A stretch of DNA of 64,000 bases from Mantamonas sphyraenae STR306 (Eukaryota; Protista; CRuMs). Shown piece by piece: positions 8,525-29,102 of the stretch; positions within the stretch are counted from its first letter, which is position 1; every line of letters begins with the position of its first letter. Below the pieces are notes generated by a model. It was not told the origin of the DNA and searched no databases. It saw only the letters and a program-made list of their open reading frames with translations. The position numbers and the translations under genes are program-made. The DNA lies in contig JAPMXV010000030.1 in NCBI GenBank assembly GCA_026936335.1, forward strand, positions 372,001 to 436,000, read 5' to 3'.

Positions 8525-9901
8525 TCAAACACCATCGTCGTCGTCATTGCCATTGCCATCGTCGTCATGGATGGAAAATCGAGCCACAAGGATGAAGAGG
8601 AGGGTGACGGCAGCCATAAAGACGGCATAGAGCACAAAGTGGCCGTTGGCTGAATCGGCGAGGGTGAAGGAAATGACAATGACGATGGCATTGCCCACGC
8701 CAGCAGACAACTGCCATAAGGCATTGATGGCATTGCGGAGCGAGTCTGGTGATTGGTTGTAGGCGTATTCGAGGCCTGGGATGGCCACTAGCACCTCTGC
8801 GGCACTGATGAGAGCATACTGGGGCAATTGCCAGGCAATGGAGAGTGGATGGTCGGCGTCGTCCATCCAATGTTGCAGCACGGCAGCCATGACAAAGGAG
8901 AGGGCGGTGCACACCATGCCAATGCCCATGCGACGCAGTTCCGACAGTTTGGAGAGGCCCACACGTGCAAAGATGGGAATGAAGAGCAGGACCATGACAT
9001 CGTTGATGCTGGGCATGAGATCCGGAGGCACAGTCAGGGGACCCACGATGCGATCCATGGCCTGGGCTTGGAACACCCATGTCGATGACTGCTGGTAGTA
9101 CAACGCCCAAAACGGAGGCAGCAGGGCAAACACCTTGGTCACCTTGACGAGTGCGTTCCACTCCACGGCTGTGTACACACACACGGTGCCGTTGGAGGGC
9201 ACGGGAGGCTTGCGGACGACTGCGTGGCCGGCGAGGAAAAACACGAGGGAGGCGAGGCCGATGACGGCGACGCAGGCAAGCAAGACCCAGGTCCAGCCCA
9301 GTTCCTGACGCAGGAAAGGGAAGCCAGCCTCACCAATCATGTTGCCGACATTGGACCAAAAGTAAAAGGTGGCCATGGCGCCTGCAATCTGGGACGGGTC
9401 GGCGGCGCCGTTCTTGAGGAGATCACCGACCAGAACGGGTTGGATGGGATTGATGACACCGTAGGAGAGGGCCACGAGAGAGAGGGAGGACAGAGCGACC
9501 CACTTGAGGTCCATGCCATGCATGAGAAGGGTGGTGGCAAGGACAACGTGGCCCACGGTCCAGCAGAGGGTGGCAACACGCTGCGTTTCGTAGTTGCCCA
9601 GCTTGTTGTCAGCCAGCCAGCCACCCAGAGGGGCCACAAAGGAGTAAACACAGACAAAGGCGGCGACAAGAGCGGTGGAGGTGGAGTCGGAGAAGAAGCG
9701 AGCGAGAAAGAGGGCGAGGACGGCTTGCATCCCACTTTGGGCCACCGCTTGGCCCACAGTGACCACCATGAGCATCAGCAGGCCCGGACCCGTGGTCTCC
9801 ACATGTGCCAATGCACCAGGGTTGGCCACATTTACGGCCACTTCGGGCCGAGGCACCAGCCGAGTGCGCTCGTCGTCACTGGGGCGGTCTGACACAACCA
9901 T
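8525..9901 (-). CDS. POT/PTR2 (SLC15-like) oligopeptide transporter
   Basis: GGWLADNKLGNY, FYFWSNVG, FWALYYQQSSTWVFQA, WQLPQY...AEVL...GLEYAY; about 12 TM. Confidence 0.9.
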   Translation of the reverse strand: MVVSDRPSDDERTRLVPRPEVAVNVANPGALAHVETTGPGLLMLMVVTVGQAVAQSGMQAVLALFLARFFSDSTSTALVAAFVCVYSFVAPLGGWLADNKLGNYETQRVATLCWTVGHVVLATTLLMHGMDLKWVALSSLSLVALSYGVINPIQPVLVGDLLKNGAADPSQIAGAMATFYFWSNVGNMIGEAGFPFLRQELGWTWVLLACVAVIGLASLVFFLAGHAVVRKPPVPSNGTVCVYTAVEWNALVKVTKVFALLPPFWALYYQQSSTWVFQAQAMDRIVGPLTVPPDLMPSINDVMVLLFIPIFARVGLSKLSELRRMGIGMVCTALSFVMAAVLQHWMDDADHPLSIAWQLPQYALISAAEVLVAIPGLEYAYNQSPDSLRNAINALWQLSAGVGNAIVIVISFTLADSANGHFVLYAVFMAAVTLLFILVARFSIHDDDGNGNDDDDGV

Positions 9902-25030: not shown

Positions 25031-25082
25031 TTTGGTGGATGTGTGTGGGATTGGCTGCGGTGGGGCTGTGTTGCCCGCGCGC

Positions 25083-25095
25083 TTTTCCCGCCAAA
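25083..25095 (+). promoter_or_regulatory. E2F-like site TTTTCCCGCCAAA in the 85-bp divergent spacer
   Basis: Matches the TTTSSCGC consensus; a reverse CCAAT (ATTGG) lies nearby at about 25050. Confidence 0.3.
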
Positions 25096-25115
25096 CATTG
25101 TCACCACGTGCGCAC

Positions 25116-27166
25116 ATGTTTGGTGTCATTGAAGGCTTCTACGGCCGTCCATGGACGCGTGAACAACGAAGACACCTGACCACGTCGTTGATGCTTCGGC
25201 ATCTCTCAACACATACGTGTATGGCAACAAGGACGACGAGAAGCTGCGCACACAGTGGCGAGAGCGTCTGGACGAGGAGGAGTTGGCCCAGGTGTGCAGC
25301 CTGGTGGACGAATGCACTGCCAACGGTGTTGCGTTTGTGTTTTCCCTCTCGCCAGGTCTGGATGTGGACTTTGCACGGTTGGAGGAGGAGGTCCAGGCGG
25401 CGGTGGACAAGGTGGCACCCCTGGTGGACCATGGCGTGCACACACTGGCCGTGTTCTGGGATGACATTGAAGAAAACGTGGACGCAGAGGCACAGGTGGC
25501 GTTCACGAATGCCCTGCTGCAGGCGTATCCGTCCTGCACGTGGTTGTTTTGTCCAACCGAGTACTGCGAGGAAAGGGCAGCAGACGGAGACGTGTGTGCC
25601 AGTGCCTACCTCACCACTTTGGGCGACAAGTTGCACCCAAGTGTCCATGTCATGTGGACAGGACCCAGTGTGATCTCGGCCGGCATCACAGTGGCCCATT
25701 TGAAGCGCATCAACGGCGTGTTGCAGCGCAAGGTACTGCTGTGGGACAACCTGTTTGCCAACGACTACGACGTGTATCGACAGTACATGGGAGCATACTG
25801 CATGCGACGTGGGTGCATTTTGGACCACGTGGCAGGCATCCTCGTCAATCCCAACTGCGAGTACGCAGCCAACCACGTGGTGGTCCACTCTCTGGGCTCC
25901 TTTGTGGCCCAAGGTGACACATACACACCCGCCATGGCCTTGGACGCTGCATTGGACCATTGGCATGCCGATCTGGACGAGGCCATCTCCATGGAACACC
26001 TGCGCATGCTTGTGTCGCTGTTCAGCAACCCGTTCACCCTGGGAACCTGGGCTCAGAGCTGGGTACATCTGGCACAGCACGTCTTTGGCACCTACGATGA
26101 AGACAGCAGTGATCACGATCAGGGATGGCAAGCAGATGCACAGCAACTGATCCAGGCTTGCAACGATGTCATTGGTCTGTTTGATGCTCTGACAGAGGCA
26201 AGTGGAGCACGTGCACGTGATCTGGTGTATGCCGTGTATCCTCGTGTGTGGTCAGTCAAGGAGGAGGCTCTGTTGCTGCGTTCACACACCCAATGGCTGT
26301 GCAACGGCGCGTCGGGCAAGCACCGATCCTTTGACCACCAGCCTTCCCTGTACCGTGGTGGCATCATTCGTGACCTGCAGGCATTGTTGGACATGGATGC
26401 ATCCGGTGCCTTTGCTGCCTCGTCCATGTGTCGTCGCAGGGCAGAGGGGGCACCACAAGGGAGTGCGTTCACCGTGCGTGCCGCAGATCCCCAGCAGGAC
26501 CATGAGGGCATGTATCGCGTGTGTCTTCTCACAGGAGACGCCGGGGACGATGGATCGCATCTGTTTGCAGACGATCCCATGGTGTTGGGGCACAGGTACG
26601 TGGGCCCCTACCTGCACCTGGAAACACCGTTTTCCCTGGCACTGGAAGACAGCCAGGGGGTGTGCGGGTACTGTTTGGCCACTCCAGACTCCACTGCGTT
26701 CTATGCACGCTACCGCAACGAGTGGTTGCCCGACCTGCGTTCCAAGTATGCGTTCACCGAGTCACCCTCCACCCCGTCGCAACGCGTGGCCAATCTCTTC
26801 CACGAGATGGAACAGTACGACGAGAGTCTGCTGGCTGAGTTTCCTGCCCATCTTCACATCGACTTGCTGCCACGTGCTCAGGGCAAGGGCAACGGACGAC
26901 GTCTGATCGAACAGCAGCTGGCACACCTTTGCGCTGCAGGCTGTCCAGGGGTGCACCTGGAGATGGCAGCATCCAACACACGTGCACTGGCCTTCTACCA
27001 ACGCCTGGGCTTCTTTGTGGTGAGTCGGGATGATGAGGACATCATCATGGCGCAATACTTGCAACCCATGGACAACGACACGGGATTGACAACAACACCA
27101 CCGCCACCACCACCAGCAGCAGCCGTGACGGGACTGCCATGCAACCAGACGAGGGAGCTGTGGTGA
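25116..27166 (+). CDS. OGA: GH84 O-GlcNAcase/beta-N-acetylglucosaminidase with C-terminal GNAT domain; frame break at about 25165-25205; possibly fused to the next CDS
   Basis: GVIEGFYGRPW, LNTYVYGNKDD, catalytic WDD, FCPTEY, WTGPSVIS, WDNLFANDYD, NPNCEY; GNAT FPAHLHIDLLPRAQGKGNG...FYQRLGF. Confidence 0.92.
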
Positions 27167-28891
27167 GTGTGGACGAAGACACGCTGCCAGTGACGGAACG
27201 ACGCAATCCGCTGAGCGAGAGGCTGAGCAGCAGCACAAGCCAGGAGATCGTGCGGATCCTGCGCAGCACAGACGCACAGATGTTTGGAGGGTATGGAGGG
27301 TACGCTGGGTTGATGGATGATGTGCAGGTGGAGGCATTGGAACGGGTGGGGGCAGCCATAGGTGAACTTGTGGATGGGGGACGTAGCGATGTGCGTGTTG
27401 TGTTTGCCGGGTGTGGCACAAGTGGACGCATGGCATACTACTGCGCACGTGAGGCCAACAGAGCCCTTGTGGGCCAGGGGCAACCCCCTGTGTTTCGCTA
27501 TGTCCATGCGGGCGGTGACAGAGCGCTGTTCCTGAGCGACGAGCTTCCGGAAGACGATGCACTGACAGCACAGAACGAGTTGGAGGAGGTGGTGGCAGAC
27601 ATGAGCCAGTATGTGTATGTGGGCATCTCGTGTGGGTTGAGTGCCCCCTACGTGTGTGGACAATTGGAAGCAAGCCTGGATGACACCCGTTGTCTGGTGG
27701 CAGCTGCCCTGGGGTTCAACCCGGCAGACAAGGCAAGGGACAGTGTCGTCCAACATGACTTCCAGGTCACCTTCCGTCAAACGGTCCTGAGACTGACGCA
27801 ACACCCACGTGGGGTGCTGCTCAACCCGGTGATCGGTCCCGAACCTGTGGCTGGATCCACACGCATGAAGGGGGGCAGTGCCACCCTGTGCATGTTGCAA
27901 AGCATGGTTCAGACGGCGTTGCACGCTTCTCCCTCTGTCCTCGACTCGTTGGAACACTTGCAACGCGTGTGCGGACGAGCCTATGCGCATGGCTCCGTGG
28001 AGGCTGTGGCTGTGCTCATGGATGCCTGTGCTGCCACCTATGCCCGTGATGGCAATGTGTACTACGCCGGTGTGGGCGATGCTGCCGTTCTGGCTGCCAT
28101 CGATGCAAGCGAAATGCCCGACACCTATGGATTGCCCTTTGAACAAACACGGGCGTTTGTCCATGGAGGCTGGGCCACAGTGGCCAATCAGAACGTGCAA
28201 CAGCGTGCCCTCTTTGCAAAGGATGTCCTTACTCGCATCGACCTCGATGACATGGCCAACGATGTCCAGCTCCAATCGCACGACACCGTCCTCATCGTCC
28301 TCATGGTCCAGGAGCTAGCACACCTTCCAGCTGACTCGGTCGACACTCTCAATGCCCTTGCAGCTCGTTGTCGTCAGGTCGATGGTGTCGCTGTCCACAT
28401 CCTTGCTGTTCAGGAACAGGGAAAGGCCTCGCTTTCCGAGATGGGTCTGGACATGGATCTGGTGCACTCGTGTGCGCTGTTGACAGTGCCTGCATGCACC
28501 TCTGCCATCAACACAGCCTCTCTGGCCTTCAAGGTGGCTCTCAACGCCGTGTCCACGGGTGCCCAGGTCCAGCAGGGGGTCGTTTACCGCAATGTCATGG
28601 TCAACGTGGGCCTAAACAACAACAAACTGTACTGGCGAGCTGTGCGCGTGGTGGCCAGCACCTGTGATGTCTCTGTGCACGAGGCGGAAGACCACGTCCT
28701 CGCCGTCATCTTTGGCAGCGCAGACGCGTCGACCGATCCACCTCTGTGCTCCAGCGCATCGACTAGCCACAGCAGTGGACAAGGTTGTCCCATGTGCCAT
28801 CATGCTGGCGACCGGAAGAGCTCAATCGGTAGCACAGGCGCGCGAGCTCCTCACGCAAGGAGTGGCGGCAATTGTAGACAAGAAATTTTGA
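27139..28891 (+). CDS. Glucokinase regulatory protein / MurQ (MurNAc-6-P etherase)-like double-SIS protein; frame break at about 28725-28765
   Basis: PVTERRNP, GCGTSGRMA, AGGDRAL...PEDD, VGISCGLSAPYV, GPEPVAGSTRMKGGSAT, IDASEMPDTYG, KVALNAVSTGA..GVVYRNVMV; the C-terminus DKVVPCAIMLATG...KKF* is in another frame. Confidence 0.88.
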
Positions 28892-29102
28892 TTGACACAG
28901 AAATTTATGTTTGGGACCAACCATACAAATTCACACATGAATCAAAATTCCTGTTGCAGGTAGGAGTGCCCTTCTGGAAAGCATTTCATTCTAGACTCTG
29001 CTTTCCTGTAACACAGCGCAGGAGACCGAAACCAGGGCCAACTCTATGCAAAGCGTGGAAATATGCGGGAGGTGAAGCTGCGCCAGTGGACCCACGAGAA
29101 GA

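What the first reader, a model, noticed from the sequence alone, without database searches (positions are those of the whole stretch)
25116..28891. O-GlcNAcase-GNAT overlapping, and probably fused to, a GCKR/MurQ-like protein: candidate amino-sugar salvage or sensing module
Seen: the GH84-GNAT ORF stops at 27166 but the SIS ORF ATG is at 27139, a 28-nt same-strand overlap. The SIS frame is open from 27037 and reads as a natural linker (GIDNNTTATTTSSSRDGTAM, with host-typical AAC/ACC/AGC codons). One extra G in ACGGGATT (about 27082) would fuse them into a GH84-GNAT-SIS-SIS protein of about 1250 aa, and similar 1-nt deficits recur in this window. Known: GH84 releases GlcNAc, MurQ converts MurNAc-6-P to GlcNAc-6-P plus D-lactate, and GCKR is a sugar-phosphate sensor of the MurQ family. 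Inference: either a bacterivore's peptidoglycan-sugar recycling enzyme or an O-GlcNAc eraser regulated directly by sugar phosphates. The functional linkage is notable even if the two are not fused.
Basis: partly seen in the sequence, partly recalled or inferred. Interest (0 to 1): 0.82.

Follow-up and report, generated by a model that had tools for sequence, protein, structure and literature searches.

The report
O-GlcNAcase fused to MurNAc etherase-like module
The two overlapping reading frames are really one gene of about 1,259 codons, split only by single-base assembly errors, and it joins an O-GlcNAcase-type sugar hydrolase and acetyltransferase to a GKRP/MurQ-type etherase module, a pairing that recurs in other protists and points to a shared amino-sugar salvage role.

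Summary
Contigs from three public runs add one base at 25192/3, 28727 and 28761. They also add a net +1 (mod 3) inside the low-complexity stretch 27086-27130. Together these changes give one open frame, 25116-28891, of about 1,259 aa.

The protein has a GH84 catalytic domain, a stalk and a GNAT, which is the full O-GlcNAcase architecture. The catalytic Asp-Asp pair and the acetyl-CoA P-loop are both intact. A linker of about 35 aa follows, then a GKRP-type module of two SIS domains and a lid. This module keeps the residues that align with E. coli MurQ Glu83 and Glu114.

No other protein with this domain order was found, but the linkage recurs:
- GKRP-GH84-AT in two very divergent eukaryote-like metagenome lineages
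- GKRP-AT
- GKRP-ROK kinase-AT, including Chrysochromulina, with the same OGA-type acetyltransferase

Bacterial GH84-AT genes sit in sugar-uptake or kinase operons. The genome has three GH24 lysozymes. It also has at least 10 OGT-type genes and only this one GH84.

Best reading: a cytosolic amino-sugar salvage enzyme (GlcNAc release, MurNAc-6-P to GlcNAc-6-P) that is probably also the cell's O-GlcNAc eraser. A pure sensor role for the GKRP module is the main rival. This is a new variant of known kinds. Function is inferred, not shown.

The parts
25116..28891 (+). Single gene of about 1,259 codons (GH84-stalk-GNAT-linker-SIS-SIS-lid). The window sequence is interrupted by four single-base deficits.
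25116..25982 (+). GH84 (NAGidase) catalytic domain. Catalytic Asp-Asp pair at 25460-25465 (FWDDIEEN).
   Evidence: Pfam PF07555 at 195.9 bits plus an N-terminal piece. Aligned to human OGA LLFDDIDHN, E 1.6e-87.
25192..25193 (+). Assembly deficit 1. Contigs insert one base here, joining frame 0 to frame 2 inside the GH84 domain.
   Evidence: table 4 (X1, X2, X3)
25979..26405 (+). OGA stalk domain
   Evidence: Matches human OGA stalk chains 5uhk_B and 11lj_C, E about 2e-10, and runs continuously within the full-length OGA alignment.
26459..27058 (+). OGA-type GNAT acetyltransferase domain. P-loop Q-G-K-G-N-G at 26879-26896.
   Evidence: Pfam GNAT families. OgpAT 3zj0 E 1.1e-40. P-loop consensus Q/R-x-x-G-x-G/A from PMC3814719.
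27059..27162 (+). Low-complexity Thr/Pro/Ser linker. The apparent stop (27164-27166) and the ATG at 27139 belong to the artefactual two-ORF reading.
   Evidence: GKRP homology starts at about 27163
27086..27130 (+). Assembly deficit 2. Net +1 (mod 3) in the contigs, joining the GNAT frame to the SIS frame. One run carries an allele 12 nt shorter. The exact base is unresolved.
27358..27672 (+). First SIS domain (GKRP_SIS_N). GCGTSGR phosphate loop at 27409-27429. Glu-Asp at 27550-27555 aligns with E. coli MurQ Glu114-Asp115.
28000..28308 (+). Second SIS domain (GKRP_SIS_2). In IDASEMPDTYG, the Glu at 28111-28113 aligns with MurQ Glu83.
28589..28888 (+). GKRP-like C-terminal lid domain, split in the window by deficits 3 and 4 (one base each after 28727 and 28761)
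   Evidence: Pfam PF20741 positions 1-50 and 61-92 fall in different frames. Insertions. The corrected tail aligns to the end of fish GKRP.

Best explanation
This is one gene encoding one cytosolic protein of about 1,259 aa. It has no signal peptide and begins directly with the GH84 motif. The stop and overlap at 27139-27166 are artefacts of single-base deficits in the assembly.

The N-terminal two thirds are a complete O-GlcNAcase-type unit: a GH84 beta-N-acetylglucosaminidase, a stalk and a GNAT that still has its acetyl-CoA loop. The C-terminal third is a GKRP-type double-SIS module with a lid. By homology this is a MurNAc-6-phosphate etherase.

Most likely mechanism (inferred):
- The protein is a hub for amino-sugar salvage.
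- The GH84 domain releases beta-linked GlcNAc, from O-GlcNAc proteins and/or from GlcNAc-MurNAc fragments left by the cell's GH24 lysozymes.
- The GNAT N-acetylates de-acetylated amino sugars, so that they become substrates.
- The GKRP module turns MurNAc-6-P into GlcNAc-6-P plus D-lactate.
- All of this feeds the GlcNAc-6-P and UDP-GlcNAc pool that the many OGTs consume.

Shown here: the gene structure, the domain identities and the conserved motifs. Inferred: the activities, the substrates and the coupling between domains.
For: Gene structure:
- Contigs from three runs restore all four frames.
- The corrected halves have no stops. They align over residues 3-649 with bacterial GH84-AT and to the last residues of fish GKRP.

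Domains and motifs.

Recurrent fusion of the same modules:
- P0163 and P0148 are GKRP-GH84-AT. They are 27-36% identical to each other and sit on eukaryote-like contigs.
- P0276 is GKRP-AT.
- Six clusters are GKRP-ROK kinase-AT. Their AT matches this AT at E 1e-34 to 1e-43, and one cluster includes Chrysochromulina parva.

Literature:
- A kinase followed by an etherase is the bacterial MurK-MurQ route (PMC5790795).
- Bacteria acetylate GlcN ends of peptidoglycan fragments before GlcNAcase cleavage, and a fungal GH3-GNAT fusion has GlcN N-acetyltransferase activity (PMC4680927).

Bacterial context:
- GH84-AT genes lie beside an EIIC transporter in 39 of 80 loci.
- In Oceanicola the order is ABC permease, GH84, AT, then a PF01869 kinase.

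Own genome: three GH24 lysozymes, at least 10 SEC-type OGT loci and a single GH84.
Against: - No enzyme activity, transcript or peptide data exist. No RNA run was available.
- The contigs come from one study, possibly the sample that the assembly was made from.
- The base added in 27086-27130 was inferred from lengths and not seen directly.
- The glutamates that align with the MurQ catalytic pair are also kept in human GKRP, which has lost nearly all activity, so they do not separate enzyme from sensor.
- No MurQ or ROK gene lies within 8 kb of bacterial GH84-AT genes in 80 loci.
- The genome's only ROK is a weak match to the fused ROKs.
- No GH25, GH22, i-type lysozyme or Amidase_2 was found.
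- The window's domain order was seen nowhere else.
Confidence: 0.55

Rival explanations
1. This is the cell's O-GlcNAc eraser, with a built-in, non-catalytic sugar-phosphate sensor. The GKRP module binds hexose or hexosamine phosphates and tunes the hydrolase allosterically, tying O-GlcNAc removal to nutrient state.
For: The genome has at least 10 OGT genes that match human OGT far better than SPINDLY (E 1e-172 against 1e-77), and this is its only GH84. The GH84-stalk-GNAT part aligns along the whole of human OGA. The old etherase site of GKRPs is a general binding site for phosphorylated sugars.
Against: GKRP regulatory functions are reported only from jawed vertebrates onwards, and protist and invertebrate GKRPs tested are etherases. 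The same module is fused to a ROK sugar kinase in other protists, which fits a pathway better than a sensor. The residues aligned with the MurQ catalytic pair are kept.
Confidence: 0.2
2. The fusion is real but has no functional meaning. Two neighbouring genes were joined by chance in a gene-dense genome, and the two parts work independently on unrelated substrates.
For: This domain order was found only here. The linker is a variable microsatellite-like stretch.
Against: The same families are fused in at least three other arrangements in divergent lineages. Chance does not readily explain that.
Confidence: 0.12
3. The assembly is right as it stands. The locus is either two overlapping genes or a decaying pseudogene carrying four frameshifts.
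For: This is the window sequence as given.
Against: Contigs from three runs add the bases that restore every frame, and X1 shows almost no substitutions over this locus, none in the contigs across three of the four breaks. Apart from those sites, both long frames are free of stops and keep the catalytic motifs. In addition, 258 notes on this genome mention frameshifts, which suggests systematic indel error.
Confidence: 0.05

Closest known systems
Metazoan O-GlcNAcase (human OGA/MGEA5; PDB 5m7r, 9qen)
   Same: GH84 catalytic domain with the Asp-Asp pair, then a stalk and a C-terminal GNAT-fold domain, aligned along the whole length (E 1.6e-87). OGT partners are present in the genome.
   Different: This protein has no long disordered insert between the catalytic domain and the stalk. 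Its GNAT keeps the acetyl-CoA P-loop that human OGA has lost. It carries an extra C-terminal GKRP module of about 590 aa.
Bacterial GH84 plus acetyltransferase (Oceanicola granulosus OgOGA/OgpAT, PDB 2xsa and 3zj0; fused proteins of 590-725 aa in Verrucomicrobiota, Planctomycetota and Acidobacteriota)
   Same: 38-43% identity over GH84-stalk-AT, an intact P-loop and no signal peptide.
   Different: The bacterial genes lack the GKRP module. They sit in operons with sugar transporters, a DegT aminotransferase or a PF01869 kinase.
GKRP-like MurNAc-6-P etherases of protists and invertebrates (Naegleria gruberi, lancelet) and vertebrate GKRP (PDB 3w0l, 4bb9)
   Same: Two SIS domains plus a lid, 33-38% identity (frog GKRP chain E 4.4e-62), and the motifs GCGTSGR, E-D and DASE.
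   Different: Here the module is the C-terminal part of an OGA-type protein. A second, free-standing paralogue on contig 19 belongs to the animal-type clade, whereas this copy does not.
GKRP-GH84-AT, GKRP-AT and GKRP-ROK-AT fusion proteins from metagenomes and Chrysochromulina parva (P0163, P0148, P0276, P0003 and others)
   Same: The same families are joined in one chain, and the same OGA-type AT domain is present.
   Different: In all of them GKRP is N-terminal. The window protein has it C-terminal, and its GKRP lies outside the GKRP-ROK clade.
Bacterial peptidoglycan-sugar recycling sets: NagZ-type GlcNAcase, GlmA glucosaminide N-acetyltransferase, MurK kinase and MurQ etherase; also the fungal GH3-GNAT enzyme RmNag
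   Same: The same four activities appear as domains here and in the related fusions. N-acetylation before GlcNAcase cleavage and a GlcNAcase-GNAT fusion both have precedents.
   Different: Different protein families supply the hydrolase (GH84, not GH3) and, in the fusions, the kinase (ROK, not PF01869). I recall from memory that these genes are clustered in Clostridium acetobutylicum, but I could not read the paper.

Membership tests
GH84 O-GlcNAcase (OGA type) | GH84 catalytic domain above the Pfam cut-off | tested here: met
   PF07555 at 195.9 bits (cut-off 25), plus profile positions 2-25 in the N-terminal piece
GH84 O-GlcNAcase (OGA type) | Adjacent catalytic aspartates (human D174/D175; residue numbers from memory) | tested here: met
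   FWDDIEEN (25460-25465) aligned to human LLFDDIDHN
GH84 O-GlcNAcase (OGA type) | Stalk domain and C-terminal GNAT-fold domain | tested here: met
   Continuous alignment to human OGA residues 551-901, to stalk chains and to OgpAT
GH84 O-GlcNAcase (OGA type) | An OGT partner in the same genome | tested here: met
   At least 10 GT41 loci. Two were tested and match human OGT at E 1e-172 and 6e-129, against 1e-77 and 2e-56 for SPINDLY.
GH84 O-GlcNAcase (OGA type) | Removes O-GlcNAc from proteins | not testable with these tools
   Needs an enzyme assay
Active OgpAT-type GNAT acetyltransferase | P-loop Q/R-x-x-G-x-G/A, needed for acetyl-CoA binding | tested here: met
   QGKGNG at 26879-26896. Consensus and mutational evidence are in PMC3814719.
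Active OgpAT-type GNAT acetyltransferase | Binds acetyl-CoA and has a known acceptor | not testable with these tools
   The acceptor is unknown even for OgpAT
GKRP/MurQ family (MurNAc-6-P etherase type) | Two SIS domains plus a lid | tested here: met
   PF22645 at 120 bits, PF22198 at 28.4 bits, and PF20741 at 39 bits plus a second piece. The corrected tail aligns to the end of fish GKRP.
GKRP/MurQ family (MurNAc-6-P etherase type) | Phosphate loop G-x-G-T-S-G-R | tested here: met
   GCGTSGR is invariant in alignment A1
GKRP/MurQ family (MurNAc-6-P etherase type) | Residues equivalent to E. coli MurQ Glu83 and Glu114 (catalytic roles recalled from Hadi et al. 2008, not re-read) | tested here: met
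   Glu114-Asp115 correspond to E-D at 27550-27555. Glu83 corresponds to the Glu of IDASE at 28111-28113 in the second SIS domain. Human GKRP keeps them too, so this feature does not discriminate.
GKRP/MurQ family (MurNAc-6-P etherase type) | Converts MurNAc-6-P to GlcNAc-6-P and D-lactate | not testable with these tools
   Needs the D-lactate-coupled assay described in the preprint
Vertebrate-type glucokinase regulator | Inhibitory binding to glucokinase, modulated by sugar phosphates | not testable with these tools
   The literature places this trait in jawed vertebrates only, and this copy lies outside the animal-type clade

The most novel reading that the evidence does not exclude
OGA-type GH84 and acetyltransferase domains, GKRP-type etherase and a ROK kinase may together form a cytosolic pathway in eukaryotes for salvaging bacterial cell-wall amino sugars. 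If so, the two puzzling animal proteins, the pseudo-acetyltransferase tail of O-GlcNAcase and the glucokinase regulator GKRP, would both be relics of that one pathway. The OGA-type acetyltransferase would then be an amino-sugar N-acetyltransferase and not a histone acetyltransferase.
Probability: 0.3. Interest if true: 0.8.

Novelty: new variant of a known kind. Interest (0 to 1): 0.6.

Why it matters
The acceptor of the OGA-type acetyltransferase domain is unknown, and so is the reason animal O-GlcNAcase carries a dead copy of it. The role of GKRP homologues outside vertebrates is also poorly understood. A natural chain joining the two, together with sister fusions that add a sugar kinase, gives a concrete and testable hypothesis: all of them act on GlcNAc and MurNAc-type sugars. 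It also supplies proteins with apparently intact active sites on which to test this.

The result also has a practical side. All four frame breaks in this gene are assembly errors, so many of the frameshift findings in this genome may be artefacts too.

Tried and rejected
- **Fetching a corrected contig.** I looked up the neighbouring FAH-domain protein, but nothing was on record. The exact base missing in 27086-27130 therefore stays unresolved.
- **Intron at the junction.** GTGAGT motifs occur at 27021 and 27163. I rejected an intron because the GNAT reads through the first motif with good homology, and the contigs fix the frame by +1.
A gap there lies outside the masked stretch and would have been listed. 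It was not.
- **RNA evidence.** No run on record as RNA holds the stretch.
- **Word-based protein searches.** They found no protein close to this one and no protein with this domain order. The exhaustive search found none among the best 150.
- **MurQ, GKRP, ROK, NagB/PIG-L or PTR2 next to bacterial GH84-AT genes.** None was found in 80 loci.
- **Pyruvyl transferase and other neighbours of one bacterial locus.** They are not conserved.
- **Own-genome ROK as a partner kinase.** It is only a weak match to the fused ROKs and has no AT domain beside it.
- **Domain trees.** The AT tree is poorly resolved. The number of independent fusion events therefore cannot be counted, though the fusions are scattered on it.
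- **Literature.** No paper holds both O-GlcNAcase and etherase. The papers on MurQ catalytic residues and on Clostridium GlmA could not be read.
- **GH25, GH22, i-type lysozyme and Amidase_2.** None was found in the genome.
Full report
**What is in the sequence.** The window is part of a 25-Mb, 78-contig, gene-dense eukaryotic genome with 58.6% G+C. On the + strand, a GH84-GNAT frame ends at TGA 27164-27166. A second frame is open from 27037 and has an ATG at 27139. It carries a GKRP-type module. Pfam gives NAGidase and GNAT families for the first frame. For the second it gives GKRP_SIS_N, GKRP_SIS_2 and GKRP-like_C.

**Four frame breaks, not one.** The GH84 domain is itself split. Profile positions 2-25 are read from 25116 in one frame and positions 27-288 in another. 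The lid domain is also split, with positions 1-50 and 61-92 in different frames. Breaks inside conserved domains of otherwise stop-free frames suggested assembly error, so I laid public data on 25050-28950.

**Read evidence.** Four runs of one study hold the stretch, kept as Logan contigs. Contigs of X1, X2 and X3 insert one base at 25192/25193, one after 28727 and one after 28761 (table 4). Rows inside the masked repeat 27086-27130 were dropped by the tool, but the piece table still shows what happens there:
- X1 record 5 covers 26926-28086 (1161 bases) with 1162 letters, one gap and no substitutions.
- X2 record 8 has four gap letters, of which three are listed.
- X3 record 11 has 14 gap letters, of which three are listed. 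The rest is a net loss of 11, which is a 12-nt shorter repeat allele plus one base.

Each run therefore gives a net +1 (mod 3) in that stretch, which takes the GNAT frame into the SIS frame. It was not.

In a script I applied the three reported insertions. The N-terminal piece then has 657 aa and no stop, and it aligns over residues 3-649 with a bacterial GH84-AT protein. The C-terminal piece has 586 aa and aligns to within three residues of the end of a fish GKRP. The whole gene, 25116-28891, encodes about 1,259 aa. No RNA run was available, so a single transcript is inferred, not shown. A further 258 notes on this genome mention frameshifts, which fits systematic indel error in the assembly.

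**The N-terminal two thirds.** The best solved relative is human O-GlcNAcase (E 1.6e-87), aligned over the catalytic domain, stalk and C-terminal acetyltransferase-like domain. The catalytic Asp-Asp pair is present (FWDDIEEN, 25460-25465). The GNAT domain matches the Oceanicola acetyltransferase OgpAT at E 1.1e-40. It keeps the P-loop Q-G-K-G-N-G (26879-26896). Human OGA has lost this loop, and mutating it in OgpAT abolishes acetyl-CoA binding (PMC3814719). The protein starts directly with the GH84 motif, so it has no signal peptide.

**The C-terminal third.** It matches frog and human GKRP chains (E 4e-62 and about 1e-61) and, more weakly, MurQ etherases. Homology starts at about 27163, so the stretch 27059-27162 is a low-complexity linker. 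I aligned it with E. coli MurQ taken from MG1655.
- The phosphate loop GCGTSGR is conserved.
- Glu114-Asp115 correspond to E-D at 27550-27555 in the first SIS domain.
- Glu83 (LDASECPPTYG) corresponds to IDASEMPDTYG in the second SIS domain.

This is what is expected of a duplicated and fused MurQ dimer. The catalytic role of these two glutamates is from my memory of Hadi et al. 2008. Human GKRP keeps them as well, so they do not prove activity. A 2026 preprint reports that Naegleria, lancelet, frog and reconstructed ancestral GKRPs are active etherases. It also reports that glucokinase binding arose only in jawed vertebrates.

**Is the linkage found elsewhere?** No protein with the window's domain order appeared in two word-based searches or among the best 150 of an exhaustive search. 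The closest GH84-AT relatives are compact proteins of 590-725 aa, and one carries a bacterial name (Luteitalea). The same modules are nevertheless joined in other orders:
- **GKRP-GH84-AT.** P0163 (1102 aa) and P0148 (1423 aa) have this order. P0163 lies on a 96.6-kb metagenome contig with plainly eukaryotic neighbours (CLU, RCC1, CRAL-TRIO and proteins of nearly 3,000 aa). It is also found in a Logan contig. The two proteins are only 27-36% identical to each other.
- **GKRP-AT.** P0276 has this order.
- **GKRP-ROK kinase-AT.** Six clusters have this order. Their GNAT matches the window's AT at E 1e-34 to 1e-43 over about 195 residues, so it is the OGA-type domain and not a generic GNAT. One cluster includes a Chrysochromulina parva protein.

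In the GKRP tree, the GKRP-ROK proteins form one well-supported clade and the window's copy lies outside it. The genome's second, free-standing GKRP gene on contig 19 falls in the animal-type clade. The AT tree is poorly resolved, but the fusions are scattered across it.

**Bacterial context.** At least 589 bacterial loci encode GH84-AT relatives. Within 8 kb of 80 of them there is no MurQ, GKRP or ROK gene. An EIIC-type sugar transporter lies beside the gene in 39 loci. The loci I scanned also hold a DegT-type sugar aminotransferase and a GFO/IDH/MocA oxidoreductase. In Oceanicola granulosus the order is ABC permease, GH84, AT and then a PF01869 protein, with overlapping starts and stops. PF01869 is the family of the MurNAc kinase MurK (PMC5790795). 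These cytoplasmic bacterial enzymes therefore look like parts of amino-sugar uptake and catabolism.

**The organism's own gene set.**
- This is the only GH84 gene.
- There are at least 10 GT41 loci. The two I tested match human OGT far better than SPINDLY.
- There are three GH24 lysozyme genes, one PF01869-type kinase, one weakly related ROK and a NagB-like gene.
- GH25, GH22, i-type lysozyme and Amidase_2 were not found.

**How it most likely works.** A kinase followed by an etherase is the known bacterial route from MurNAc to GlcNAc-6-P. Some bacteria N-acetylate GlcN ends of peptidoglycan fragments before a GlcNAcase cleaves them. A fungal GH3 GlcNAcase is fused to a GlcN N-acetyltransferase (PMC4680927). 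GH84 enzymes use the substrate's acetamido group in catalysis (established knowledge), so an N-acetyltransferase beside the hydrolase makes chemical sense.

The recurrent fusions of GH84, OGA-type AT, ROK kinase and GKRP therefore read best as pieces of one amino-sugar salvage route ending in GlcNAc-6-P. The GKRP module would be its etherase. With many OGTs and no other GH84, the same protein is also the only candidate O-GlcNAc eraser. The two roles are compatible, since both return GlcNAc to the pool that makes UDP-GlcNAc. I put about 0.9 on the gene structure and about 0.5 on this functional reading.

**Rivals.** The main rival has the GKRP module as a non-catalytic sugar-phosphate sensor tuning the eraser (about 0.2). 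A fusion without functional meaning has about 0.12. The assembly-as-given reading, meaning two genes or a pseudogene, has about 0.05.

**Novelty.** Every domain belongs to a well-known family, and automatic annotations of the metagenome fusions already list their parts. I found no paper that mentions O-GlcNAcase together with etherase. The four papers that mention O-GlcNAcase together with GKRP are unrelated by title, and I did not read them. This is a new variant of known kinds. Its value is the hypothesis it offers for the OGA acetyltransferase domain and for non-vertebrate GKRPs.

Noticed in passing
G000 contigs C30, C36, C7, C49, C44, C13, C3, C2, C70 (for example C30:243940-245274): The genome has at least 10 GT41 loci of the OGT (SEC) type, an unusually large set for a 25-Mb genome with a single GH84. 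Some are split between frames (for example C36:104236-105560), probably by the same kind of assembly indels.
   Followed up: partly
window 8525-9901 (-): A PTR2/POT-family transporter gene lies 15 kb upstream. In two divergent metagenome lineages a PTR2 gene lies directly beside the GKRP-GH84-AT gene. Of the four PTR2 genes in this genome, this one is the best match to that neighbour (27% identity, E 3e-30). From memory, the related animal SLC15 transporters carry muropeptides.
   Followed up: partly
window 25096-25112: Two allelic contig forms lie just upstream of the ATG in runs X1 and X3, a 6-nt deletion versus G>C at 25110 and 25112. Contigs break at 25113. This suggests heterozygosity or mixed strains.
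   Followed up: no
whole genome: In the scan, 258 notes on this genome mention frameshifts. In this gene the public contigs removed four of four breaks, so many of those findings may be assembly artefacts. They should be checked against reads first.
   Followed up: partly
G000:C19:79930-80274 (L012 202-2157, -): A second, free-standing GKRP-like gene (651-aa ORF) keeps the same motifs. It groups with the animal-type GKRP clade (SH-aLRT support 98), unlike the fused copy.
   Followed up: partly
L026-L105 (bacterial loci), for example L030 8001-13845 and L031 7977-13821: A gene set conserved in Verrucomicrobiota, Planctomycetota and Acidobacteriota: GH84, AT, DegT-type aminotransferase and EIIC transporter, plus GFO/IDH/MocA or an alpha/beta hydrolase. 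EIIC is present in 39 of 80 loci. The substrate is unknown.
   Followed up: partly
L084 7154-10840 (Oceanicola granulosus): The structurally studied OgOGA and OgpAT genes are flanked by an ABC permease and a PF01869 (MurK/NAGK family) kinase gene, with overlapping starts and stops.
   Followed up: partly
G000:C34:694121-694474, C35:305804-306163, C73:99702-100055: Three GH24 (phage-type) lysozyme domains sit inside open frames of 303-522 aa. They are candidate peptidoglycan-cleaving enzymes of this protist.
   Followed up: no
L013 698-2076 (-) = G000:C18: The genome's only ROK match sits in a 246-aa open frame, and a 260-aa ORF in another frame abuts it. This may be another single-base break.
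   Followed up: no
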